64,000 bases of DNA from Anolis carolinensis (Eukaryota), in contig NC_085843.1 in NCBI RefSeq assembly GCF_035594765.1, positions 43,973,955 to 44,037,954 of the forward strand. The letters run 5' to 3'. Within the stretch, counting starts at the first letter, position 1. The number at the start of each line of letters is the position of its first letter. The notes under the pieces were generated by a model that saw only the letters and a program-made list of their open reading frames with translations, was not told the origin of the DNA and made no database searches. The position numbers were made by a program, and so were the translations under genes. Below are positions 22,299-63,362 of the stretch, piece after piece.

Positions 22299-24447
22299 CT
22301 AGCTGTGCCCGGCCACGCGTTGCTGTGGCGAAGTATGGTGGTATGGGAAATAAAGTATTGAGGAATTGGTGGTAGTTAAGGTCAAGGGTAAAGGTTTTCC
22401 CCAGACATTAAGTCCAGTCGTGTCTTACTCTGGAGGTTGGTGCTCATCTCCATTTCTAAGCCAAAGAGCCGGCGTTGTCCGTAGACTCCTCCAAGGTCAT
22501 GTGGGATGACTACATGGAGCGGCGTTACCTTCCCGCCGGAGCAGTACCTATTGATGCACTCACATTTGCATGTTTTCGAACTTCTGGGTTGGCAGAAGCT
22601 GGGGCTAACAGTGGGGGCTCTCTCCGCTCCCCCAATTCAAACCTGTGGCCTTTCGGTCCAGAAGTTCAGCAGCTCAGCGCTTTAACACGCTGCGCCATCA
22701 GGGGATATTATTTCCTAAAGGTTGTGAATATACAATATTTCTGATTGGGTTTTTTTGTTTGTTGGAGGCAACTATGAATGCTGCAATTAGGAAAAATGAT
22801 TAGGATGTAATGGCCTTGCAGCTTTAAAGCCTGGCTGTTTCCTCCTTGAGTGAATTTTTTGTTGGGAGGTGTTAGCTGGCCCTGATTGTTTCCTGTCTGG
22901 AATTCCCTTGTTTTCAGAGTGGTGTTGTTTGCGATATTTTATGTGCTTCTACTGTCTGTGGCCCTGAGAAAACAGAGGATTTTCCAGACTTTGATGATGG
23001 GAATACTTTGTTGGGAGGTGTTAGCTGGCCCTGATTGTTTCCTGTCTGGAATTCCCTTGTTTTCAGAGTGGTGATGTTTGCGATATTTTATGTGCTTCTA
23101 CTGTCTGTGGCCCTGAGAAAACAGGATTTGCCAGACTTTGATGATGGGAATACTTTGTTGGGAGGTGTTAGCTGGCCCTGATTGTTTCCTGTGTGGAATT
23201 CCCCTGTTTATTTACTGTCCTGGTTTTAGAGATTATATTGTTCTGCATTATTCTATCCCAGTAATTATTTCATATTAAAGAAGAATCTCACTTATCCAAC
23301 ATTCGCTTATACAATGTTCTGGATTATCCAACGCAGTCTGCCTTTTCATAATCAATGTTTTTGTAGTCAGTATTTTAAATTCATTGTGATATTTTAGTGG
23401 GAAATTTGTAAATACAGTACAGTAGAGTCTCACTTATCCAACATAAACGGGCCGGCAGAACGTTGGATAAGCGAATATGTTGGATAATGAGGAATTAAGG
23501 ATAACCCTATTAAACATCAAATTAAGCTATGATTTTACAAATTAAGCACCAAAACATCATGTTAGACAACAAATTTGTCAGAAAAAGTAGTTCAGTACAC
23601 AGTAATGCTATATAGTAATTACTGTATTTATGAATTTAGCACCAAAATATCACGATATATTGAAAGCATTGACTACAAAAATGCGTTGGATAATCCAGAA
23701 CGTTGGATAAACGAGTGTTGGATAAGTGAGACTCTACTGTAAATACTACATAGCATTACTGCGCATGGAACTACTTTTTCTGTCAAATTTGTTGTATAAT
23801 ATGATGTTTTGGTGCTTAATTTGTATAACGATTACCTAATTTGATGTTTAATTGGCTTTTCCTGAATCCCTTCTTATTATCCAACATATTCACTTATCCT
23901 GCCGGCCTGTTTACGTTGGATAAGTGAGACTCTACTGTATATTTCTAATCTTATATTATCTGCTCAGAACTGGATTATATGAGGCTCCTTCTTCACAGCT
24001 GTATAAAATGCACACTGAAGTGGATTATATGGTAGTGTGGAGTCAAGATAATACAGTGCAAAGCAGATAATATAAGATTATAAATGGGTTATATAGCTGT
24101 GTTGAAGGGCCTTGAGTCTACACTGCCATATAATCCAGTGCAAATTAGATAATCTCTGGAAGAAGTCTAAGTGAGGCCTAAATCTGCCTGTCCCCTAACT
24201 GAAACCTGGCTGTCCCTTGGTTGCTAGGCAACCAAGTGGGCAGAGATTAGCCCTCTAAACTGGCAGCAATTAGATAAAAAAAATTATTGCTCTCCCTCTA
24301 ATTAGGACTTTATTTTTCTTTTCTTTTTGTTGTATCAACCTTGAGGCGTGGATGATGGGTTGTGTTGTCAAATTTTGAGGTTGGGGGGCCTGTACTTTTG
24401 TTGTTTTGTGAATCGCCGTGATGCCATCACTCTTTTATATATATAGA
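22299..24447 (-). mobile_element. Non-autonomous composite Helitron
   Basis: On minus strand: 5' TC(TATATATATAAAAGAGTGATGGC), 3' hairpin GCCACAGCAACGCGTGGC then CTAG; inserted between A and T with no TSD; same termini as 48078-50502. Confidence 0.88.
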
Positions 24448-37461: not shown

Positions 37462-37659
37462 CATTCCAGACAGGAAACAACCAGAGCCAGCTAACACCTC
37501 CCAACAAAGGAGCCCCCCAGGGAGGAAACAAACACACTTTGAAGCTGCAAGCCCATTCAATGCTAATCAAGGTGACTAATTACAATGTTCATACTTGCCT
37601 CCATAAACAAAAACCCACTAAGGACGACGCCACAGCAACGCGTGGCCGGGCACAGCTAG
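37462..37659 (+). mobile_element. 5'-truncated Helitron end with a Penelope-derived fragment
   Basis: Ends CGCCACAGCAACGCGTGGCCGGGCACAGCTAG|T, identical to the other Helitron 3' termini; left boundary approximate. Confidence 0.7.
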
Positions 37660-41094: not shown

Positions 41095-43030
41095 GTAAGT
41101 ATGTTCTAGATATCAAAGTTTATGATAACTGCACTCCCCTTTTTTGGAACAGGGTGACAGAACAATACTATAGAAATAAGTAAGGATGAACAAGTTAATC
41201 ATGTCAACAACAGGAAAAAAAAATTGTCTCAGCCCTTAGATTCCCAGTTCTTGGGGCAAGGAATAGGAATCTCAAGCTCCGAATGCTGCATATTTTTTCT
41301 TAATTCAAGCTTAGTGGGGTTTTTTAATTGAATGGCAGCCCTCTATTCTGGTTGATGCTTAATATAGCATACTTAATAGCATCACCAGAGACTCCCCTTT
41401 GTTGCATCACTAGGCCCCCTTTTCTGTGATGATGGGTCATCCCTAGCTCTCAGGTTTTGGACCTGGCACAGTTCTGACTGGGTAACTCTGGCCTCCACTC
41501 TGAAATTGTCTGTATTTCTATCAGCTGCTTCTGTGCCCAGCTGCCTACAGATAGTACCAGGATATCTAATGGTTCTTAATACTACAGATGTTCCCAGCAT
41601 TCTGGAGTTCTTGGAATCGTTTATTTTTTGAAACAAAGACACTTTCATGAAATGACTGTCATGGGAGGCTTGAATTACTGTCATGGAATATCTGGCCAGT
41701 CACAATCCAGAAGGCAAATTAATATGACTAAAAGGTAGAGTCAAGAGAGGGTGTTCCCCGGCACCAAAGTACTCTTCTGAATTTTCAATCTTCTGATCCA
41801 ACCATGTTTCAGAAGGTCAAGCTCACAATGTCCAGAAATAAGCAACAAATCCCTGAAACTGAGTACAAGATGGGGGTGGGGTTGTTTTTTTAATTGAAAA
41901 TCACATAAAGCGAAATAAAATACCAATTTTACATAAAACGAAAGTAATGAACAAAGAGAAACACATAGGTTAAATATTGATCTCACTGTTAAGGCAGGTT
42001 TTCCTTTTGAATATTTCTGATCTTGTTTCCCAATTCCCAAAATTACAGAAGTTTTATTACTTCAGCAGAAAACTAACGGGTGCTCTCTGGACAGCCAGAT
42101 GTACCACACCCAGCACAAAGAAAATTGTTGCAATTTATAGTTCACAGACAATCATACAGAAATATACTAACATACTTTTCTTCTTGGCCCACCTCTCAAC
42201 TCCTCCCAGTTCCATCTCCTGATTTTGTCTCTCCTAGTTGCTGCACTGAGCATTTTTGCAACTCTTTTTATCTGTTATTTTCCCAAGCCGAATTTAGCCA
42301 GGACTTGAAATCACATTTCAAAATGGCAATACAGAAATTATCCTAAAATTGCTAAAAATTATATTTCAGTCAATTACATCTTCACCTCCACTCTTGAACC
42401 AAAAACAGATGTGCAATGCTACATTTTTCCATTCCCATACCAGATACACACACACACACAACACGTTTGTGAGTTTGACTTTTGGCAATTTGATTATTGG
42501 CAAATTTTATTAAGATGTTATTTCTAGGAATCTTTGAGTCCTCCAGTGAAATTCTGTGGTCTTGGCAGCACTGTGACCACAGCCAAGTTCCCCTACAACG
42601 GAACAATCTTTCAGATACTCTTTCATCTGTGACTGTTGTCCATGGCCTTCAACAATACCCTCAACATTGATTTCACCTTTTAAAAAAATCACTCATCTTC
42701 ATGTATTAATCAATTGCCACTTCACTGTACTTACTTCTGAGCCAAAAAACCACATAATTCCAACAAGGACCCACAAGTAAAACATGCAGAAAAACCAAGC
42801 AAAATATTTATGTCTGCAAAGTAAATCAGCTCTGCATACACACACACAGTCAACACACACAACACACACCAAAACAACAGTAAGACAACTAGACCACACA
42901 CAACACATTTTCACCTATCATTCCTCCTTTTTTAGCCTCATTACCTGAACAGATAAAAGGTGATTTCGTTATCAGAATCTGAAAATACTTCAAAAATTAT
43001 GTTTTTGACATATTTTCCTTGAATTTGCAG

Positions 43031-44077
43031 TGGTTACAACTAAATGAAGACCTGAGCTTGAAGAGGTTTATAAATGATTCAGGGTGTCCAGAAAACCTCA
43101 AATATGACTTTAACAAAAACGGTGAACTCAGACATGAAGATACCAATGAACCTTTTATTTTTAATTATTACCATTCTTATAATGGCAATCACAAACGCTA
43201 TCAAATTCTTGGATATTCGATTACTCAGTATATATATGAACTTCTGGAAAAGGCTTTTAAGCTGCAAAAGACTTATATCCCAATAGATGCTCCGGTCAGT
43301 AACCTTTGCACTTTCTTTTTTATGAGTGAGAATGCATTAACAAATTGCTCCACTCTAGTTGTCCTTCTTCAAGACCAAGGACCATCTCGTGCGGGTCAGT
43401 GGGGACAGAAGACCATAATTCATGAAGGTCTCCAACACGGATCTCAAATACCATTCATTGCAATGGCTCTGCAGTGCTCTTGGGGTGTGATTGTTTTAAA
43501 CCCCAATGACAATTTCATTGATCTAAAAATGGAATCCAAAATCCCAGACTTCTCTGAGGAAGATTCTGCCTCTTCTCTGCAGTTACCTTGGGTAATCCCA
43601 AAGAGGTGCAGCAAAAGCCCTGAAGAACATACAACATATGTTTGGGACCACTTCATTTCAAAAACCACAGCTAGAAATGTGGCTTTCATTGCCCATGGCT
43701 ATGGGGGATTGGTTTTCGTCAACTTGCTTAGGCAGAGATCTTTAGAGGTGATGAACAAAGTATATGCTGTTGCGCTTATTGATTCCAAACACCACATAAT
43801 GCACCAGACGCAAGGTGATTCCCAGCTGCAGGAATGGATACAGAGACACTGTCGAAAGTGGGTAGCAGACAGTAAGCCTTTGGATAAGACAGTTGGCTGC
43901 TTTATGAAAGTCGATTGCCCTAGTGTTTCTGCAGGAACTGAAAAATACAGCTTGGTGCCTTCTTTTAGTCTACAGTCCATCTTCAAGTATTTAAAAAATA
44001 AACTGAAAGTTGGCAGTAGAAAACGTTTTGTTCGTTCGCCTATTGCAACAAGGAGCAGAAAAGTAATGAAAATGTAA
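43031..44077 (+). CDS. FAM172B: FAM172B/ARB2B-like Arb2-domain alpha/beta-hydrolase-fold protein, main exon
   Basis: Uninterrupted ORF with FAM172 motifs (Y.FN..GELR, RAGQW, GSQIPFI, GVIVLNPN.N, SPEEH..YVWDHF, DCP.VSAGT); tttgcag acceptor at 43030; position next to SENP7 and TRMT10C matches human FAM172BP. Confidence 0.88.
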   Translation, partial: WLQLNEDLSLKRFINDSGCPENLKYDFNKNGELRHEDTNEPFIFNYYHSYNGNHKRYQILGYSITQYIYELLEKAFKLQKTYIPIDAPVSNLCTFFFMSENALTNCSTLVVLLQDQGPSRAGQWGQKTIIHEGLQHGSQIPFIAMALQCSWGVIVLNPNDNFIDLKMESKIPDFSEEDSASSLQLPWVIPKRCSKSPEEHTTYVWDHFISKTTARNVAFIAHGYGGLVFVNLLRQRSLEVMNKVYAVALIDSKHHIMHQTQGDSQLQEWIQRHCRKWVADSKPLDKTVGCFMKVDCPSVSAGTEKYSLVPSFSLQSIFKYLKNKLKVGSRKRFVRSPIATRSRKVMKM

Positions 44078-44817: not shown

Positions 44818-44983
44818 TTAAATGTCTTGGTAGAGAAGGTCATATTTGGGAATATTCTTTGGATCAATTGGACTTCGTACAATGAGTTTTCCACGCATTG
44901 CTCCACGGTAAATCACCTCAATCAAATCTATGAAGTCTTGTTTTGTTTTGAAACTTCCCACAAATTTTGTGTGATCTGGAGAT
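44818..44983 (-). CDS. TXNL4B: TXNL4B coding exon 3 ([35 protein letters not shown]...DLLYQDI*)
   Basis: AG acceptor at 44984-44985, TAA at 44818-44820; near-identical to the recalled human DIM2 C-terminus. Confidence 0.95.
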
Positions 44984-45488
44984 CTAAGTAGGGGGAAAAA
45001 AACTCAAATGTAAATGAAAGCAATAATAATTTGGAGTGTACATTTTAAATATTTATGATTTGAAATCTGAACTTTAAACTCATCTATTAATCTTTTAAAT
45101 AAAACATTTTGAAAAATCAGGGGATCACTATAAATTAACAGGCAATTTGAAGGCACATATCCACATATATATTTAGGATTGAAGATAAAGTTTCCTGGTA
45201 TTTTGAAGTACATACAATTTAAATTTGTACGTACAGAATACTCCAGGATTGAAATTCACAATGAAATGAGATCTATACACATAGCATAGATGAATGAATG
45301 ACACAAATATTTCCTGCTGTAACAGTTTGGAAATGCAAAGCAATGGGCAGAGGGAATCATAATATGCATACACTTAAGGAACTGACACATAGTTTGATCA
45401 CTGGCACAATTTTAGCATCATAAATTATCTCCCACAAGCAATGAACACCCAATTGAACTACACATGGATTACATACAAGCCAACTTAC

Positions 45489-45640
45489 CCATAATCAACT
45501 TTCATGTGCTGCCCGTTGAAAAAGAAGACTGTTGATGGAATATAGCTGATGTCAAAATATTGTGTGTAAACTGGTACTTTGCTTACATCCACCAAATAAA
45601 TTGTGGCCATTTTGCTTAAGTCATGAGATGTCTTTGCAAG
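45489..45640 (-). CDS. TXNL4B: TXNL4B coding exon 2 (LAKTSHDLSKMATIYLVDV...FFFNGQHMKVDYG)
   Basis: AG/GTAAGT, 152 nt, phase 0-2. Confidence 0.95.
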
Positions 45641-46197
45641 CTGTGGACAAGGAAAAATAGGTGCTGCATAACTAAAGAGAATAAGAAACCAAGTCTTTAA
45701 TTGACAACCCCTTATTTAGTTATTTGGAAAGCAGTAACAACAGATCCCATTGGGATAAAATTCAAAGACATAATAGCCATGTAAGTCTGGAATATCGGTA
45801 CACAAAGGGATTTTGTAGTACCTTAGAGACTTTTTAAAAGAAAGAAATTGGTAACACATGTTTTCAAAGAGTAACTTCCTTTATGCCTTTTCCCCCTCGG
45901 TTACTAAGTTCTATACGATCTATTTGCATAGTTCTTTTTCTCAGTTTCTTAAGGTACTGCAAGATCCCTTTGCATATTTCTTTAAGTTAGGGTGCATCTG
46001 CGCTGTAAAATTACTGCAGTTTGACAGCACTTTATCTACCATGTCTTAATGCTATGGAGTCGCAGAATTTGCAGTTTTACAAAAATTTTAGCCTTCTCTA
46101 ACTCTGGTGCCTTACCAAATGACAAATCCCAGATTCCATGGTATAGACCCATGGCAGTTAAAGTGGTATCAGACTGCATTCATTTTACAACGTAGAT

Positions 46198-47656
46198 CAG
46201 TGGTTCCCAAACTTATTTGGCCTACCTCCCCCTTTCCAGAAAAAATATTACTCAGCGCCCCCTGAAAAGGGGGTGTGTGGCTTAGAGGGGTGGGCGTGGC
46301 TCCTGCTCAAGAGGCCGGGCTGAGCCTCTCCCCTAGCCCAAGATGCAGGGTGGGGAGGGGGAGGTGGGCGGGGCCACAAATGGGCAGCCAGGACTGGGAT
46401 GGGTGGAGTTACGAGCTCTGAGGCAGGGCTGAGCTTCTATCCCTGTCCTGCAGTGCCTGCCAGGACACAGGGGGCAGGGCCTCTTCCCAATTGCCTGACA
46501 GGGCTGAACCTCTATACCCCATCCCGTGTTCTAACAAACGCCTGAGGGGAGGTATACAGAGGCTCAGCCCTGTCTCGCACTCTTGGGAAGAGGCCCCGCC
46601 CTGCCCTTTAGTCCTAAAAGGCCTCTCAGGAGATGTGATGTCTCATGGGCCTTGTAGTCCCCTTCCTAGTACTATTGTGGCAGACGAGGAGGAAAACATG
46701 GGATTTCCACCGGTTCAGCCAGAATCGGAGCCCCTGCACCTGGAGGATGTTTGCCCTCAAGAAGTCAGCCAAACAAGCCTTGGGCAGAATTCTCCCCCGT
46801 TTTCTCGAAAGGACAATTATAATAGAGATAGAGGAGCTAGGGAGGCGAATCGCCGGAGCGCCAGAATCGCAGCCAAACAATTAGCTGATTAGGTCTGCTT
46901 CCCTTGGGAAATTCTAAGGAGTCATGCATCTGGACAGAGTTGGGTTTCACTTCTAGTTCTCCAGGGAAAGTGTTCTTCGGGCGGGAAACGAGACCCTATT
47001 TAGGTGTTTTGCCGCGAAGGAAACCTTGCGGAGTCAACTCGTCAGCTTGAGGAGTGAGATCGTGTGTGGACTTAGTAATCCCAGTTCCTTGTTTCCCGGA
47101 CCAAGTTCCAAGCCTGCCTTGCTTCACGTTTGACCGCGGACCTCGCCACGGACCTTGTTCTTGCTTCTTGTTTGCCTCGTACCAACTCTTGTTTCGCCAA
47201 GAATCTAGTTTGTTTTCCAGCCTTGTTGTCAAGCTTCAATGGACTAAAAGACCTTGTCATCTCCCCACACTATTGCTTGGCAAAGTGTGTGTTTCGGTTA
47301 TTGGATTATAACTTTGGACCTTAATATCGCATATTGGACATTACTTTCCTGGACTATATTTGACCTTTCCTGAAAGGTCTACTTCTGAACTATATTCTTC
47401 ACTTGTTTTTATTGACTTTATATATTCCTACAATAAAGATATTAGATAGAATCCGGCCTCTGTGCATGGTTATTGGTGTTCTGTAGCCTGGGTCCTGACG
47501 GGAGAGGTATAGATTCTCAGCCCTGTCTCGGGCTCTTGGGAAGAAGCCCCGCCCCTCCCCTGGCTCCGCCCCATGCCCTAATAGGTGCCATCACCGCCCC
47601 CCTGTATTGCTGCAGCGCTCACCAGGGGGCAGTAGCGCCCACTTTGGGAATCACTG
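46198..47656. mobile_element. hAT non-autonomous element interrupted by a solo LTR
   Basis: CAGTGGTTCCCAAA / TTTGGGAATCACTG termini, imperfect TSD xxGTAGAT. Confidence 0.75.
46634..47500 (+). mobile_element. Solo LTR (Gypsy-like)
   Basis: TGT...TGACG ends (CA mutated to CG), 5-bp TSD GGAGA, TATTTA box near 46997, AATAAA near 47432. Confidence 0.75.
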
Positions 47657-48077
47657 GTGTAGATGAACCCCCCTAGTATTCTCTAAGGTGCTTCAGATCC
47701 CTTGACAGACTACTATTTATATTACATATTGTATATACTACAACTTTTAATAAAATATATAATACTAATAGTATAATATACTGGTGGTATATTGTATGTT
47801 TTGTGGTATAATAACATATTTATTTATTTATTGTGTCAGAACCAAATTGAGCATACAGCTATAATGTTTAAAAAAACACAAAGATAAAAACTTGGCATTA
47901 CGCTAAATTCCCCTTGACCAGAAGCTGGCCACTTAAGTGCCTCTGGTGTTGCTGTAACAAGATCCTCCATTGTGCATGTCGCAGGGCCCAAACTGCATTG
48001 CGGTAAGTAGTCTGTGGTTTGTTCTTCTCCATACTCACATTGTGTATAATAATATAGTACAATAATATATAATATTA

Positions 48078-50502
48078 CTAGCTGTGCCCGGCCACGCGTT
48101 GCTGTGGCTTTTTTTTAGTGATGTTGGTCAATCTACATTGGGTTTTATTTTTGTTGTGACCGTCAACAAAAATTATACAGTATTATTTATTCATTTATTA
48201 CATTAAAGACATATGATAGGATATTACGCTATAACATATACGACTATTTCACAATATTAGTAGTAATATATATATATATATATATATTGTTTTGTTTTGT
48301 TATTAGTATTATATTGTAGTGTATTATAATATTATTAGCAGTATTATATGTATATACAATGTATTGTATTATATATGTATTGTATTATTATATATATTAA
48401 TATATTGCAAATTGGCCCCAGAGTACGGAATGGCCTTGTAGTTTCAAAGCTTGGGTGGTTCCATGTGTTAGAGGGGGGGAATGCTTTGTTGGGAGGTGCT
48501 AGGTGGTCCTGATTGTTTCCTGGATGGAATTTGTGTGTTTTCAGACTGTTGTTGTTTATTTACTGTGCTGAGATGAGAGAGTGATGAGTACGGAATGGCC
48601 TTGTAGGTTCAAAGTGTGGGTGGTTTCCTGTGTGAAGGGGGGAATCCTTTGGTGGGAGGTGTTAGATGGCCCTGATTGTTTCCTGGATGGAATAGCTGTG
48701 TTTTTAGAGTGTTGATCTTTATTTACTGTCCTGAGATGATATTGTTGTGTATTATTGTACCACAGTAATTATTTCATATTACAGTAGAATCTCACCCAAC
48801 ATTCGTTTATGCAATGTTCTGGATTATGCAATGGAGTCTGCCTTTTAATAGTCAATGTTTTTGGAGTGAGTGTTTTTAATGTATTGTGATATTTTGGTGG
48901 TAAATTTGCAAATACAGTAATTACTACATAGCATTACTGCGCATGGAACTACTTTTTGTGTCAAATTTGTTGTATAACATGATGTTTTGGTGTTTAATTT
49001 GTATAATGATGACCTAATTCGATGTGTAATTGGTTTTCCTGAATCCCTTCTTATTATCCAACATATTTATTTATGCAACGTTCTGCCGGCTTGTTTATGT
49101 TGGATAAGTGAGATTCTAGTGTATATTTATAATGTGATATTATTTGTTTAGAAGTGGATTATATGAGGCGCCTTCTGTTATAACAATAATAATTATTATA
49201 GTCTTGAATGATTATCATTGTGATAAAAATAATAACTACTTATTAGTTGTTATTATATTGTTGAATGATTATCAATGTTATAATAATAATTATTAATTTG
49301 TGAATGATTATTACTATAATAATAATAATAATAATTTTCTATTATTACGATTTGTTAATACATTGTTGAATGATTGTCAGTGTTATAATAATAAGAACTG
49401 ACTATTATTATGAATTATTATGTTCTCGAATGATTATCAGTATTATACTAATAATAAATTAGTATTATTATTGGTGATTATTACATTCTTAACTGATGAT
49501 CAGTTATTATATTAATAATTATTACAGGGAAGGGAAAGGTGAGGGCGATAGGGTTTGAGAGGGGAAAAAGGGGGGCTTCTGAGGCATTGGAGGGGTTGTA
49601 ATTTGTGGGTGAGAACAACAACAACAATAACAACAACAGAAAAGGGGGAAGCTCAGCCTGGGCCAACTGGGGCCTTCCCTTGACTTGTTTTGGGCGCCAA
49701 CTTCCACCCTTCCTGGCCTGAGGCTCTTTCCTTTTCCCCATCAGCCGTTTAACCGGGTGAGGGGGAAAAGGAAGGGCTCTGAGGCCAGGAAGGGCGGGGG
49801 TTGGCGCCCCAAACAACTCGAGGGGAGGTCCAGGCCTGCTCGAGGGCCGTGCCCTCCTCTTCCCCCCTCACCTTGAAGAGCTTGAAGACCTCCGAGAAGA
49901 ACCGAGAAGGGAGGAGGAGGAGAGAGGGTGAGGCGGGGGGGGGGGCTCTGCGGGGCCTTCCTCGCATTGGGGGGAGGGGAGAGGGGCGGGAGGAGGGGGC
50001 CTGAACGGCAACCGGGGCCCTCCATGGGCCCTGAGGGGGGGGAGATTGAGGGGGAGAGGGCAGAGAGCGACGTGAGGCCCGCACGCCTCCCAGCGTGGCC
50101 TCCTCCATCCCGCGCCCAGCAAGGAATCGGCCTTCCTGCCTTCCTTCCTTCAGCTCTGAGGCGAGGTGTGTGTGTGCGCGCGCGGGAAGGGATGGGGGGG
50201 TGCGCGCAGGCGCACATCGCCTGTTGCAGTTTTTGGCCGTTTGTGGCCCTGTGATTGTGTTTGTCATATAAATCTTACTGGAGCCGCGCGAGCGCCATAA
50301 AGGGTTGAAGCATGGTGTTTTTGCGCATGCGTACTTAGTTTTGGCATTTTTTGGTGTTGTGATAGTATTTTATGTGTAAATTTGTTGTATCTTACTGGAG
50401 GCGGGGATGATGGATTGCGTTGCCAATTTTCGAGTTTGGGGGGGCTGTAGATTTGTTGTTTTGTCCATCGCCGTGATGCCATCACTCTTTTATATATATA
50501 GA
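48078..50502 (-). mobile_element. Non-autonomous composite Helitron carrying TE fragments and a GC-rich captured segment
   Basis: 5' TC and 3' hairpin+CTAG identical to 22299-24447; A|T insertion site; no TSD. Confidence 0.88.
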
Positions 50503-50894
50503 TGCAATGCTAATAATATAACATATATTGTAGATACATATATTAATATTGTAATGTAATACAATCTAGTAAGAATACAATATAATATATAATATTGTAA
50601 TATAATACAATATTAATACTGTATATTAATTATAATACTACTGATATAAGATAAACTGATAATACTTTTTATTATTGTAGTAAGTGCCACAAGATCCTTT
50701 TGCAAACAGAACCCAGACTGACTGACATGAAAGAGGGTCATATAATATCTTTATGCCACTGCTATATAATCCAGTTTCTGAATACAGGTTAACTGCATGG
50801 AACTAGTTTTATATGGCAGTGCAGACCCATAGTATCCACTTAAAAGAAGCTAATTTACATCCAGAAACTGGATTACATGGCAGTATAGATCCAA

Positions 50895-51696
50895 TGTGTA
50901 GTCGAAGGCTTTCATGGCAGGAATCAATGGGTTGCGGTGAGTTTTCCGGGCTGTATGGCCATGTTCCAAAAGCATTCTCTCCTGACCTTTCACCCACATC
51001 TATGACAGGCATCTTCAGAGGTTGTGAAGTCTGTTGGAAACTAGGCAAGTGGGGTTTATATATCTGTGGAATGTCTAGGGTGGGAGAGAAAGCTAATGTC
51101 TGCCTGAGGCAATTGAGAATGTTGCAATTGGCCACCCTGATTAGAACTGAATGGCCTTGCAGCTTCAAAGCCTGGGAGAATCCTTTGTTGGGAGGTGTTA
51201 ACTGGTCCTGATTGTTTCCTGTCTGGAATTCCCCTGTTTTCAGAGCGTTGTTCTTTATTTACTGTCCTGATTTTTAGAGTTTTTAAAAATACTGGTAGCC
51301 AGATTTTATTCATTTTCATGGTTTCCTCTTTTCTGTTGAAATTGTCCACGTGCTTGTGGATGTCAATGGCTTCTCTGTGTGTACTCTGGCATGCTAGTTG
51401 TTAAAGTGGTCCAGCATGTTCTCAAATAATATGCTGTGTCTAGGTTGGTTCAGGCAGGAAGCAGCCGGGCTTTGAAGCTGAAGGGCCATTCAATGGTAAT
51501 CCAGCTGGACAATTGCAACGCTCACACTTATCTCAGGCAGACAAGAGTTCTTTCTCCCATCCTGGGCCTTCCATTTGCCTGGTTTCCAACAGACCTCACA
51601 ACCTCTGAGGATGCCTGTCACAGATGTGGGCGAAACGTCAGGAAAGAATGCTTCTGGAACATGGCCATACAGTCCGGAAAACTCACAGCAACCCAG
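50895..51696. mobile_element. Penelope-like element with inverted terminal copy (GIY-YIG remnant)
   Basis: EAIDIHKHVDNFNRKEE on the minus strand; inverted copy of the terminal repeat at 51450-51696. Confidence 0.75.
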
Positions 51697-51776: not shown

Positions 51777-51908
51777 GATATCATCCAGCTGCATACAGAC
51801 GAGGTCGTCGTCCTTGCCAAAGCGAAGGACCAGGACTTTCTCCGCCACGGCTTTGATCGCCCCATCGACCTCCTCCTTGTTGGTGAGTTTGGGGAGAAAG
51901 AAACTCAT
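51777..51908 (-). CDS. TXNL4B: TXNL4B coding exon 1 (MSFFLPKLTNKEEVDGAIKAVAEKVLVLRFGKDDDLVCMQLDDI)
   Basis: GCCATG start, GTGAGC donor; the three exons total 450 nt = 149 aa + stop (Dim1/thioredoxin-like). Confidence 0.95.
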
Positions 51909-52135
51909 GGCGAGGTAAACAGGGAAGGCTCCCAAGGAGCTAGTACGCATGCGCCGAAGGAGCTCGTACGCATGCGCCCAAAAATCTTTCCTGGGAAGAA
52001 GCAGCTTCGTCGTCCAACTGCAGTGCCTTCTGATTGGCTAGGAATGTGACCAATCGTCGAAATACAATTTAGCGCCTCACTTTCCCTTCGCCTGTTAACG
52101 GAACTATCGAGCAGCGTACTGACTTCCGGGGAAGG
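51909..52135. promoter_or_regulatory. Bidirectional TXNL4B/TRMT10C promoter
   Basis: Two NRF1-like TACGCATGCGC (51944, 51967), opposed CCAAT boxes (ATTGG near 52033, CCAAT near 52050), ETS ACTTCCGG near 52122; CpG-rich. Confidence 0.8.
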
Positions 52136-52188: not shown

Positions 52189-52200
52189 GTGAGTCTTAAC

Positions 52201-52385
52201 CAGGAATGGGCAAACTTGGGCCCTCCAGGTGTTTTGGACTTCAACTCCCACCATTCCTCACAGCCTCAGGCCCTTTCCTTTCCCGCTTAAGCGACTGAGG
52301 GGGAAAAGGAAGGGGCCTGAGGCTGTGAGGAATGGTGGGAGTTGAAGTCCAAAACACCTGGAGGGCCCAAGTTTGCCCATGCCTG
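52201..52385. mobile_element. Fold-back hAT MITE
   Basis: Long near-perfect inverted arms; TSD GTCTTAAC. Confidence 0.9.
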
Positions 52386-53245
52386 GTCTTAACGGTACTC
52401 CTTTCCCACATAGGGGGAGAAGGTACATTACCCCCTTGGTATCCGCTGGGATTGGGTTTTGTATCTTCATTATGTACAATAACAAAAATATGCACAAATA
52501 TTAGGAGCTAATGCTTAAAGATCGCGTTATCAATAAAATGTACGTATCTCTTTCATATATATTTATTATCCCTTTCATTTTTTTTTCCTTTAGATTATTG
52601 ACTGTCATGTTTTCTCCAGTTGGCATGGCTTTTGGACTTCACTTGTGAATTAGACACTGCTTATTTAGCAGATGTAAGTTAAGGAACGTGGTGCATATTT
52701 TGTTTTGTGTGTGTGAAAGTAACCATAACAGGGACTGTTGGCTGGGAGTCTCCGGCGCTTGTGCTTGAATTTCTGCATGTAAATTCCTACACCAAATTTC
52801 CAATTTCGCTTCTGCACCACAATGAATTTTTTATGTTGTATGCTGCTTTGAATCCCACCCACAGAAGAAAAGCAGGATAGAAATGAATTAATAATAACAA
52901 CAACAACACTCACAATTCTTATATCTTAGATTTGCCATTTCTCTCTCTCCTTTTTTAGCCATTATTTTTGGTGTAATACTTCTTCATGTTTGCCATCTGG
53001 CTGTTAGACAGATTCACCCATTCTTTCTTTCTGTATTAGAAGGCTGGAATCCATACTTCAGGTGATCACTTTTGGAGATAGCAACCTTCTCAAGTCTCCT
53101 ATATTTAATGATCGTTTATTTTATAATGTGTCAGTTTATTTCCTGAAGTATATGTCTTATTTGGTTTGCAGTTATCTTGGCTCTATGTACTTAACAGAGT
53201 GGGAAGGCCTGTAGACCATGTGACTGGTTCAGTTACAGTTTAGAA

Positions 53246-55198: not shown

Positions 55199-56497
55199 AT
55201 GAATACTTTAAATATGTATCTATTGAATGTTGTCCGAAGATCTGTACAGTTGGCTATACAAAATAGAATGAAAAAGGATATATTTTTAGTAACACCCAGC
55301 AAGGTGATGACTTGCAGGACATTGTTTTTGTCTGCTTGGTTGAACAAAAATACTGCACCAAGTATAACGGAGAAATTAGACTTGGATGGATGGAAAGATG
55401 TAATGCGAACTACTGTGCAAGAAGAAATCAGGGAAGGAACATCCGAGAGTGAGGAAGACCCCCGTGTTGCAGCTACTAGGGAACTTATTGAGATGTGGAG
55501 GCTTTCAGGTAAAGCTGTTCCAGAAAATATCAGTGAACAGGACTTAAAGATCCTAATAGAATCTCCAACTAAAACTTCCAAAAAGAAATATTTACAATTC
55601 TTGGCTAAAAAAGAAATTCTGAAGAAAGTCAAGAAAGAAAAGAAGGAGAAACAAAAGGCAGAAAAAAGAGAATTAAATCCACCAACTCAGGAAGATGGTG
55701 ATCGTGAACTAAAAAATACATTTCTCTTAAAGTTTTGGTCCAGATCAGAAGATGCTCTCTACAATTGGAGAGCTGCACAGGCTATGATCTTTGGTCAGCC
55801 TCTGGTGTTTGACATGGATTATGAAAACTGTATGTCACGTAGAGAAATGGAAAATGCAGTAAAACAGTTGTTGGAATCTGAAGGCATGAATCGTAGGGCT
55901 CTGGACCCATTTCACTTGCATTATTGCAATTTCAAGACAGATGGTGCCTATCACAAAGAATTGATCAAACGCTATGGTGATGCATGGGACAAGTTATTTG
56001 TGACAGTGACGGAAAAGGCTCATGTTGAGGTCTTCCCACAAGATCAACTTGTGTATTTGACTGCCGATTCTCCCAATGTAATGCAAAGGTTTGAGCATGA
56101 TAAAATCTATATAATTGGATCCCTAGTTGATAAGTCTATACAGACAGGGGTCTCCCTCGCACGTGCAAAACGGCTGAACTTGGCAACAGCCCGACTTCCT
56201 TTGGACAAATACTTGCAGTGGGAGGAAGGAGCGAAAAATCTCACTCTGAATCAGATGGTGTCTATCTTACTAACCCTGAAAGATACTGGAGACTGGAAGA
56301 AAGCTTTGCAGTTTGTTCCAACCAGGAAACATGCAGGCTTCATGGATGTGTCTTTTTCAAAGAATCAGATTGAGGCATGGAAGAAGTCGAAAATACATGA
56401 GAGAAGAGTGAGCCAAGAAAAGTCTCAGAAATCATTTTCAGCAGATTCTTCCAGACAACAAGTACAGAAGAAGTGGTGGGAAGATATATCTGAATAG
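55199..56497 (+). CDS. TRMT10C: Mitochondrial tRNA m1R9 methyltransferase / RNase P protein 1 (MRPP1), 432 aa
   Basis: Single coding exon after acceptor 55171-55172; SPOUT motifs VYLTADSPN, IYIIG..VD, A.LPLDKYL.W, LTLNQM; FGQPLVFDM; basic N-terminal presequence-like region. Confidence 0.95.
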   Translation: MNTLNMYLLNVVRRSVQLAIQNRMKKDIFLVTPSKVMTCRTLFLSAWLNKNTAPSITEKLDLDGWKDVMRTTVQEEIREGTSESEEDPRVAATRELIEMWRLSGKAVPENISEQDLKILIESPTKTSKKKYLQFLAKKEILKKVKKEKKEKQKAEKRELNPPTQEDGDRELKNTFLLKFWSRSEDALYNWRAAQAMIFGQPLVFDMDYENCMSRREMENAVKQLLESEGMNRRALDPFHLHYCNFKTDGAYHKELIKRYGDAWDKLFVTVTEKAHVEVFPQDQLVYLTADSPNVMQRFEHDKIYIIGSLVDKSIQTGVSLARAKRLNLATARLPLDKYLQWEEGAKNLTLNQMVSILLTLKDTGDWKKALQFVPTRKHAGFMDVSFSKNQIEAWKKSKIHERRVSQEKSQKSFSADSSRQQVQKKWWEDISE

Positions 56498-62917: not shown

Positions 62918-63362
62918 GTGTTGTCAAAGGCTTGCATGGCTGGAATCATTGGGTTGCTATGAGTTTTCCGGGCTGTATGTTCCAGAAGCATTCTCTCTGT
63001 TCTTTCACCCACATCTATGGCCAGCATCCTCAGAGGTTGTGGGGTCTGTTGGAAACTAGGCAGTTGGGGTTTATATATCTGTGGAATGTCCATGGAGGGA
63101 GAAAGAACTCTTATCTGTTTGAGGCAAATGTGAATAGTGCAATTGGCCACCTTGATTAGCATTGAATAGCCTTGCAGCGTCAAAGCTTGGCTGCTTCCTG
63201 CCTGGGGAATCATTTGATGTGTTAGATATCCCTGATTGATTCATGTCTGGAATTCCTCTGTTTTCTGAGTGTTGTTCTTTATTTACTCTCCTGATTTTAG
63301 AGGTTTTTTTTTATTACTGGTAGCCAGATTTTGTTCATTTTCATGGTTTCCTCCTTTCTGCT
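62918..63362. mobile_element. Penelope-like fragment
   Basis: Same family as 50895. Confidence 0.75.

What the first reader, a model, noticed from the sequence alone, without database searches (positions are those of the whole stretch)
49540..50340. Helitron-captured promoter-like exon with a TESK-kinase-like end, in frame with TXNL4B exon 2
Seen: the Helitron at 48078-50502 lies in TXNL4B intron 1 on the same (minus) strand. It holds a GC/CpG-rich block that is absent from the sibling Helitron at 22299-24447. The block has NRF1-like motifs (about 50201-50214 and 50321-50332) and an open frame from ATG 50267 running 132 codons to ...SRFFSEVFK-LFK|GTGAGG, a strong donor at 49871. The donor is phase 0, as is TXNL4B exon 2 (45640), so splicing would give an in-frame chimera. 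A decayed fold-back MITE (about 49690-49815) follows the donor, as in the first introns of TRMT10C and PCNP here. Knowledge: TESK1/TESK2 have the P-loop sequence IG(A/S)GFFSEV(Y/F)K, from recall with an intron right after K, and Helitrons are known to capture host gene fragments. Inference: this is a mobilised, partly deleted promoter, exon 1 and intron 1 start of a TESK-like gene that may give TXNL4B an alternative first exon. The protein match is only 7 aa.
Basis: partly seen in the sequence, partly recalled or inferred. Interest (0 to 1): 0.78.

Follow-up and report, generated by a model that had tools for sequence, protein, structure and literature searches.

The report
Helitron with gene-start cargo in TXNL4B intron
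A 2.4-kb rolling-circle transposon (Helitron) in the first intron of the green anole TXNL4B gene carries a many-copy DNA block that looks like the promoter, first exon and splice donor of some host gene; such capture is well known from bats and maize, and I found no sign that this copy is used.

Summary
The window is Anolis carolinensis. A canonical Helitron (48078-50502, minus) lies in sense orientation in TXNL4B intron 1. It carries a block of about 840 bp (49540-50380) that its sibling at 22299-24447 lacks.

The block has the only two near-consensus NRF1-like sites in the window outside (CG)n runs. It also has CpG-rich DNA, a rare consensus donor (AAG|GTGAGG, G at 49871) and an old fold-back MITE just after the donor. 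It looks like a gene's 5' end.

- **Open frame:** the 132-codon frame is not evidence of coding. All three frames are open here, and simulations match it in 13-66% of trials.
- **TESK origin:** it rests only on the short P-loop-like peptide next to the donor. Pfam, two word searches, a 1.84-billion-protein phmmer search and PDB gave nothing. It stays plausible but unproven.
- **Copy number:** contig depths in four public anole runs put the block at roughly 4-25 times the single-copy flank, at about 99% identity. So this is one copy of an amplified element.
- **Use by TXNL4B:** no RNA run could be reached. The longest annotated TXNL4B product (163 aa) starts at the normal exon 1. The phase-0 match is unremarkable.

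The scan had already noted the same cargo on other DNA of this genome (s1-590220, s1-528361, s1-579583, s1-517346). The closest parallel is HelibatN3 with its captured NUBPL promoter.

The parts
48078..50502 (-). Non-autonomous Helitron, 2425 bp, inserted between A (50503) and T (48077), in sense orientation in TXNL4B intron 1
   Evidence: 5' TC, 3' CTAG, termini shared with the sibling at 22299-24447. No long ORF with a Pfam match.
50381..50502 (-). Helitron 5' terminal backbone shared with the sibling
   Evidence: 50381-50420 matches 24326-24365.
49540..50380 (-). Cargo block absent from the sibling: promoter-like part, exon-like part, donor, fold-back MITE and C/T-rich tail
   Evidence: Contigs of four anole runs cover it at about 4-25 times the depth of the unique flank and at about 99% identity.
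50322..50333 (.). NRF1-like palindrome, one mismatch to YGCGCAYGCGCR
50203..50214 (.). Second NRF1-like site, one mismatch
49872..50267 (-). 132-codon open frame. Its ATG at 50267 has a weak context; the internal ATG at 50108 (gggATGg) has a good one and leaves 79 codons. Probably not a real coding frame as it stands.
   Evidence: length not significant; no relatives.
49872..49889 (-). Tandem 9-bp duplication (GTCTTCAAG then CTCTTCAAG) just before the donor. Without it the frame would end ...FFSEVFK|GT.
   Evidence: Read directly.
49866..49874 (-). Consensus splice donor AAG|GTGAGG (G of GT at 49871), phase 0 in the open frame
   Evidence: Only 7 MAG|GTRAG sites occur on both strands of the 64-kb window.
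49656..49831 (.). Old fold-back MITE 40 nt after the donor
   Evidence: -68 kcal/mol, z = -8.9; 71-81% identity to the MITE at 52199-52387, no strand-specific G loss.
50031..50075 (-). Pyrimidine tract ending in AG (50032-50031). With the donor it would bound a 159-nt, stop-free, in-frame cassette (50030-49872). Hypothetical only.
49180..49539 (-). AT-rich tandem-repeat filler (18% G+C) between the cargo and the shared Helitron interior
48078..48108 (-). Helitron 3' end: short hairpin (GCCAC.GC...GCGTGGC) and CTAG
51777..51908 (-). TXNL4B exon 1 coding part (44 codons). The annotation starts 14 codons upstream, at the ATG at 51950.
45489..45640 (-). TXNL4B exon 2 (human residues 45-95), with a phase-0 acceptor
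44818..44983 (-). TXNL4B last coding exon, including the stop codon
22299..24447 (-). Sibling Helitron with the same termini and other cargo

Best explanation
This is one copy of an amplified, non-autonomous Helitron of the green anole. At some earlier time its master copy picked up about 0.8 kb from the 5' end of a host gene: promoter-proximal DNA with NRF1-type sites, a CpG-rich first exon ending in a consensus donor, and the start of intron 1 with an old MITE. This copy landed in sense orientation in intron 1 of TXNL4B, 1.3 kb downstream of the real exon 1. There it is most likely an inert, methylated passenger that is spliced out with the intron. The open frame and its phase match with exon 2 are by-products of C-rich composition and of the commonness of phase-0 introns. 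The source gene may be a TESK kinase, but that is not established here.

Shown: Helitron identity, cargo boundaries, motif content, multi-copy state, gene context and frame arithmetic. Inferred: host origin of the cargo, silence of this copy.
For: - Canonical Helitron ends, with a sibling that shares only the ends and interior repeats.
- The cargo is unique in the window except for its MITE.
- The two best NRF1-like sites of the window are in the cargo. TXNL4B's own promoter has two weaker ones, so such sites mark real promoters here.
- The exon-like part has 69% G+C and CpG o/e 0.63.
- About 0.05 donor motifs of this kind are expected by chance in the block.
- MITEs of the same family sit near the 5' ends of TXNL4B/TRMT10C and in PCNP intron 1.
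- Block contigs have 4-25 times the depth of the unique flanks in runs of four studies, with 0-4 differences per 180-415 nt. One contig spans the junction between the block and the AT-rich filler at multi-copy depth.
- The open frame is not significant and has no protein relatives.
- The longest annotated TXNL4B product of 163 aa is explained by 58+51+54 codons from the normal exon 1.
- Two of the three private changes of this copy in the exon-like part are CpG to TpG.
- The orthologous Sceloporus intron 1 is about 1.7 kb and has no Helitron.
- HelibatN3 in bats has the same anatomy (PMC4778049).
Against: - No parent gene was identified, so capture from a host gene is inferred from anatomy only.
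- The block sits right behind the Helitron's 5' end, where an element's own promoter would also sit.
- No RNA, CAGE, ATAC or methylation data could be reached, so silence is not shown.
- The annotation test sees only the longest product.
- The protein collection seems to hold no anole transcript assemblies: the anole TRMT10C cluster is seen on a single contig, the chromosome record. The blank word searches therefore say nothing about expression.
- Depth ratios from contigs are rough; the tool itself warns that they are not copy numbers.
Confidence: 0.68

Rival explanations
1. One reading: the cargo is the mobilised promoter, exon 1 and intron-1 start of a TESK1/TESK2-like gene. In this copy it works as an alternative promoter and first exon, giving an in-frame chimeric, N-terminally replaced TXNL4B.
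For: - The anatomy fits an exon trap and the orientation is right.
- Donor and exon 2 are both phase 0.
- The peptide before the donor resembles the TESK P-loop as I also recall it (not a test). The 9-bp duplication explains the extra LFK.
- The ATG at 50108 leaves 76 codons before the duplication, close to the length I recall for TESK1's first coding exon (not a test).
- HelibatN3 proves that the mechanism exists.
- Other scan notes name TESK1 for the same cargo (leads only).
Against: - No significant similarity to any protein in Pfam, two word searches, phmmer against 1.84 billion representatives, or PDB.
- The conserved residues that precede the P-loop in TESKs, as I recall them, are not recognisable.
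- No annotated product is longer than 163 aa, whereas a chimera from the ATG at 50108 would have 184.
- Private CpG decay in this copy.
- The chimera would lose residues 1-44 of the DIM1 fold.
- In bats only 3 of the many NUBPL-promoter insertions supplied a TSS.
Confidence: 0.07
2. The block is not a host gene fragment. It is either the Helitron family's own promoter and leader region, kept in this deletion derivative and lost from the sibling, or a patchwork of GC-rich filler plus a MITE that inserted later. The TESK-like peptide and the donor would then be coincidences.
For: - The block lies directly behind the 5' terminal 122 nt, where an element's own promoter is expected.
- Both Helitrons hold repeat units about 150-160 nt apart (D3/D4). 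A scan note (s1-596300; untested) describes leader mini-exons of an autonomous anole Helitron, and these units may correspond to them.
- Every frame is open in this composition and no protein relative exists.
- The MITE shows none of the top-strand G depletion seen in the neighbouring exon-like part, so it could be a later arrival.
Against: - A rare donor, two rare NRF1-like sites, a CpG-rich stretch and a promoter-proximal type of MITE occur in the right order and orientation.
- The MITE is about 20% diverged while the element's copies are about 99% alike, so it predates amplification.
- The sibling has unrelated DNA at the same position.
Confidence: 0.2

Closest known systems
HelibatN3 of vespertilionid bats (captured NUBPL promoter, six codons and a splice donor; Grabundzija et al. 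2016, PMC4778049)
   Same: A non-autonomous Helitron carrying promoter-like DNA, a short first-exon piece and a splice donor in the element's own orientation, amplified to many copies. A sense insertion in an intron could splice to the next acceptor and give an N-terminally truncated product.
   Different: - In bats the parent gene is identified and promoter activity and chimeric transcripts were shown by experiment and RNA-seq. Here neither parent nor activity is shown.
- The copy number here is tens, not thousands.
- The host is a lizard.
Maize Helitron gene-fragment capture and chimeric transcripts (for example PMC4528327)
   Same: Helitron cargo made of host gene pieces and other repeats, with exons of disparate origin offered to the splicing machinery.
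   Different: Maize elements usually carry internal exons of several genes and are transcribed from their own or read-through promoters. Here there is a single 5' gene-start-like block.
TESK1/TESK2 first coding exon (LIMK/TESK kinase family)
   Same: It is followed by a donor where an intron is recalled to lie.
   Different: - Only 7-8 residues match.
- Nothing upstream is recognisable.
- No search reached significance.
- No real TESK sequence was compared here.

Membership tests
Helitron (non-autonomous) | 5' end TC and 3' end CTRR | tested here: met
   TC at 50502-50501 and CTAG at 48081-48078. The sibling has identical ends.
Helitron (non-autonomous) | Insertion between host A and T, no target-site duplication, no terminal inverted repeats | tested here: met
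   A at 50503 and T at 48077, and likewise for the sibling. No inverted repeat of the ends among the 25 longest pairs listed.
Helitron (non-autonomous) | Short hairpin 10-20 nt upstream of the 3' end | tested here: met
   A 7-bp interrupted stem 13 nt before the CTAG, -5.8 kcal/mol. The z-score is only -1.2, so it is weak by itself but invariant in three copies.
Helitron (non-autonomous) | No RepHel gene; multi-copy | tested here: met
   No ORF of 130 aa or more in the element other than the two overlapping frames of the GC-rich block, and these have no family match or relatives. Three identical 3' ends in the window. Contig depth well above the unique flank.
Promoter/exon-trap Helitron (HelibatN3 type) | Cargo with promoter-like DNA, a first-exon piece and a splice donor in the element's orientation | tested here: met
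   NRF1-like sites, CpG-rich DNA and AAG|GTGAGG in that order on the element's top strand.
Promoter/exon-trap Helitron (HelibatN3 type) | Identified parent gene | tested here: inconclusive
   No protein relative. No tool here searches the anole genome by DNA.
Promoter/exon-trap Helitron (HelibatN3 type) | Transcripts that start in the cargo and splice to host exons | not testable with these tools
   No RNA run was offered and the laid runs behave as DNA.
TESK1/TESK2 first coding exon | Significant sequence similarity to a TESK protein or gene | tested here: not met
   No kinase family in Pfam at E up to 1. No TESK among phmmer hits against 1.84 billion representatives. Nothing in PDB at E up to 10.
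TESK1/TESK2 first coding exon | P-loop motif at the exon end with the intron in the same place and phase | not tested
   Motif and intron position are from recall only. A full-text search for the motif found no paper.
CpG island (Gardiner-Garden and Frommer criteria) | At least 200 bp, G+C at least 50%, CpG observed/expected at least 0.6 | tested here: met
   50230-49872 is 359 bp with 69% G+C and o/e 0.63. The whole block is borderline (60% G+C, o/e 0.57).

The most novel reading that the evidence does not exclude
The anole Helitron family with this cargo is a working mobile promoter and exon trap, a reptile counterpart of HelibatN3. Its copy in TXNL4B intron 1 is used in one of two ways. It may be an alternative first exon (49872 joined to 45640). 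Or it may be a 159-nt in-frame cassette (50030-49872) between exons 1 and 2, giving a tissue-specific variant of this DIM1-like splicing-related protein.
Probability: 0.07. Interest if true: 0.55.

Novelty: new member of a known kind. Interest (0 to 1): 0.3.

Why it matters
Helitron capture of promoters and first exons is an established route to new transcripts in bats and maize. I found no paper that reports it for anoles or that links TESK1 with Helitrons. If the anole family is active as a promoter, its tens of copies would be a ready-made set of natural exon-trap insertions in a model reptile. This single copy in TXNL4B adds little by itself. The scan has already met the same cargo in at least four other places, and nothing here shows use.

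Tried and rejected
- **Protein identity of the open frame.** I tried Pfam, word searches of two frames, phmmer against 1.84 billion representatives and PDB. The only hit (E = 8e-4) is a low-complexity Ser/Arg/Pro-rich protein, which I rejected as spurious.\n- **Significance of the ORF.** Rejected by Markov simulations.\n- **RNA evidence.** The one run search returned no RNA holder. The four runs guessed as 'RNA?' gave intron-spanning contigs at even depth, so they are DNA. No joint 49872>45640 was listed, but none is expected in DNA.\n- **Strand-specific G loss in the cargo's MITE.** I tested this to see whether hypermutation could hide a TESK match. Substitutions are symmetric, so it gives no support.\n- **Literature.** A full-text search for the TESK P-loop letters found nothing, and no paper holds both TESK1 and Helitron.\n- **Orthologous loci.** The A. 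sagrei locus is not on record. I did not build or search the joined Helitron-exon/TXNL4B model; exons were searched one by one by reference.

Full report
**Where we are.** The single-exon TRMT10C protein of the window (55199-56494) is on record exactly once, in Anolis carolinensis assembly GCA_035594765.1, chromosome record CM069369.1. The fetched locus is identical to the window over 18,802 bases. The gene order is TXNL4B (minus), TRMT10C (plus), PCNP (plus).

**TXNL4B structure.**
- Exon 1 codes 44 residues (51908-51777) and matches human TXNL4B residues 1-44 (E = 1e-16).
- Exon 2 (45640-45489) matches residues 45-95 (E = 1e-24).
- The last exon is 44983-44818.
- Intron 1 is phase 0 and 6.1 kb long. 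In Sceloporus undulatus the orthologous intron is about 1.7 kb.

**The Helitron.** The element at 48078-50502 on the minus strand starts with TC after a host A. It ends with CTAG before a host T, and a short hairpin lies 13 nt before the end. The element at 22299-24447 has the same first 120 nt or so and the same last 31 nt. Both share interior repeats, and a third identical 3' end lies at 37629-37659.

**The cargo.** From about 50380 down to 49540 the sibling has nothing comparable. Within the window the block matches only itself, apart from its fold-back. Reading along the element's top strand, it contains:
- an A-rich stretch with an NRF1-like palindrome (50322-50333);
- a second NRF1-like site (50203-50214);
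- 359 bp with 69% G+C and CpG o/e 0.63;
- a donor AAG|GTGAGG (G at 49871);
- 40 nt later, a 176-nt fold-back (49656-49831; z = -8.9);
- a C/T-rich tail.

Several points show that these features are not background.
- The two NRF1-like sites are the only one-mismatch sites in the 64 kb outside (CG)n runs. TXNL4B's own promoter has two two-mismatch sites.
- Only seven MAG|GTRAG motifs occur on both strands of the window, so about 0.05 are expected in the block.
- The fold-back is a 71-81% relative of the palindromic MITE at 52199-52387, just upstream of TXNL4B exon 1. Another relative lies about 530 bp into PCNP intron 1.

The order and orientation of these parts are those of a gene's promoter, first exon and intron start.

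**The open frame.** The 132 codons from ATG 50267 are real but carry no weight. All three top-strand frames are open for more than 100 codons here. First-order Markov sequences of the same composition reach the observed stop-free length in 13% of trials for the whole block and 66% for the core. The ATG at 50267 has a poor context. The ATG at 50108 has a good one and would leave 79 codons. A 9-bp tandem duplication sits just before the donor, and without it the frame would end in ...FFSEVFK.

**Is it TESK?** I could not test this against a real TESK sequence. No tool here searches the anole genome by DNA. The word search admits only proteins of 0.55-1.75 times the query length.

What I could run was negative.
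- No Pfam family at E up to 1.
- No word-search hit at E up to 10 for either long frame.
- One spurious low-complexity hit in 1.84 billion representatives.
- Nothing in PDB.
- No paper holding the motif.

From recall, which is a lead and not a test:
- TESK2 has the seven residues exactly and TESK1 has six of seven.
- The residue two places before also fits.
- An intron is said to follow the lysine.
- The 76 codons from ATG 50108 are close to the length of TESK1's first coding exon.
- The conserved stretch that precedes the glycine loop in both TESKs is not recognisable.

If the recalled intron position is right, the coincidence of motif, donor and phase would be hard to get by chance. If it is wrong, a 7-mer match means little: a 64-kb six-frame translation is expected to share hundreds of exact 7-mers with a vertebrate proteome. 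I put TESK origin at about one half. Four earlier notes of this scan describe the same cargo in other Helitron copies and name TESK or TESK1. They are unchecked leads, not support.

**Many copies.** The run search returned only anole runs that hold about half or more of this mostly intronic stretch. Laid on 45480-51479, the four runs I chose (four studies) give intron-spanning contigs at even depth, so they are DNA.

| Run | Depth of unique-flank contigs | Depth of block contigs |
|---|---|---|
| X3 | 11.6-13.6 | 315 |
| X17 | 4.1 | 60 and 83 |
| X19 | 5.0-5.4 | 21 |
| X20 | 3.3-7 | 41 and 89 |

The block contigs have 0-4 differences per 180-415 nt. One contig spans the junction between the block and the AT-rich filler at multi-copy depth. 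The tool warns that these depths are not copy numbers, so I read them only as 'several to a few tens of near-identical copies that share the same context'. This fits amplification of the whole element after the cargo was acquired. One 368-nt contig in X3 has about half the unique depth and matches 49972-50143 at 88%. It is either a diverged copy or the source gene, and I could not read it.

**Is it used by TXNL4B?** The frame arithmetic is right: the donor and exon 2 are both phase 0. But phase 0 is the commonest intron phase, so the match is unremarkable. No RNA run was reachable.

The annotation on record gives 163 residues as the longest TXNL4B product, with its start at 51950. That is exactly 58+51+54 codons from an in-frame ATG 14 codons upstream of the conserved start. 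A chimera from ATG 50108 would have 184 residues and would have been the longest. So no such coding isoform is annotated, which is weak evidence.

The blank word searches say nothing about expression. The collection appears to hold no anole transcript assemblies, since the anole TRMT10C cluster is seen on only one contig, the chromosome record.

In the exon-like part, three private differences of this copy against the majority of copies were listed. Two of them are C to T in CpG (49949, 50096). That is the signature of germline methylation, not of a protected CpG-island promoter, but the sample is tiny.

A chimera would replace residues 1-44 of a 149-residue DIM1/thioredoxin-like fold, so a working protein is unlikely.

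I also note a pyrimidine tract ending in AG at 50031. With the donor it would bound a 159-nt, stop-free, in-frame cassette. This is a second hypothetical way in which the element could touch TXNL4B.

I did not build or search any joined exon model.

**Comparison with what is known.** HelibatN3 of bats carries the NUBPL promoter, six codons and a splice donor. Mobilised into introns, it splices to downstream acceptors. In Myotis brandtii three host transcripts start in such insertions (PMC4778049). The anole element has the same anatomy, but its parent gene and activity are not shown. I found no paper on Helitron gene capture in Anolis beyond reviews, and none that holds both TESK1 and Helitron.

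**Verdict.** This is a new member of a known kind, already met several times by this scan on other DNA of the same genome. Interest is low to moderate.

Noticed in passing
window 37629-37659 (+): A third, identical 31-nt Helitron 3' end (hairpin plus CTAG) on the plus strand, with no matching copy of the 5' terminal pattern in the window. It is probably a 5'-truncated relative or one with different ends.
   Followed up: no
window 51908-51950 (-): The annotated TXNL4B product (163 aa) starts at an in-frame ATG 14 codons upstream of the start conserved with human. That ATG lies inside one of the two GCGCATGCGTA palindromes of the promoter, so the extension is probably an annotation artefact.
   Followed up: partly
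window 43019-44077 (+): An intronless 352-aa open frame with a full Arb2 domain (E = 1e-56) just downstream of TXNL4B on the other strand. It may be a single-exon gene or a retrocopy.
   Followed up: no
window 48078-50502 (-), whole element: The Helitron's top strand is A>T and C>G skewed throughout (interior: A 0.41, T 0.25, C 0.22, G 0.11; exon-like cargo: C 0.44, G 0.25). The palindromic MITE inside the cargo is not skewed, and its substitutions are symmetric. This bears on the scan's notes on top-strand G loss in Helitron cargo.
   Followed up: partly
window 50481 joined to 48077 in contigs of run X20: A high-depth contig joint links a Helitron 3' end, after one extra letter, to a point 21 nt inside a Helitron 5' end. 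This suggests head-to-tail Helitron junctions elsewhere in the genome (table 5c).
   Followed up: no
window 48479-48765, 22852-23271, 51178-51301, 63216-63308: Repeat units spaced about 150-160 nt apart (a 124-nt core in family D3) occur twice in this Helitron and three times in the sibling, and single copies lie outside Helitrons. They may correspond to the leader mini-exons that another scan note describes for an autonomous anole Helitron.
   Followed up: no
window 49972-50143, run X3 contig of 368 nt: A contig at about half the single-copy depth matches this part of the exon-like cargo at 88% identity and then runs on into sequence unlike the window. It is a diverged copy or possibly the source gene (table 8, record 27).
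   Followed up: no
L002 6024-7976 (Sceloporus undulatus): The orthologous DIM1-family gene is annotated with a 95-aa product only (exons 1 and 2). Its intron 1 is about 1.7 kb against 6.1 kb in the anole, so the anole intron has been expanded by repeats.
   Followed up: partly
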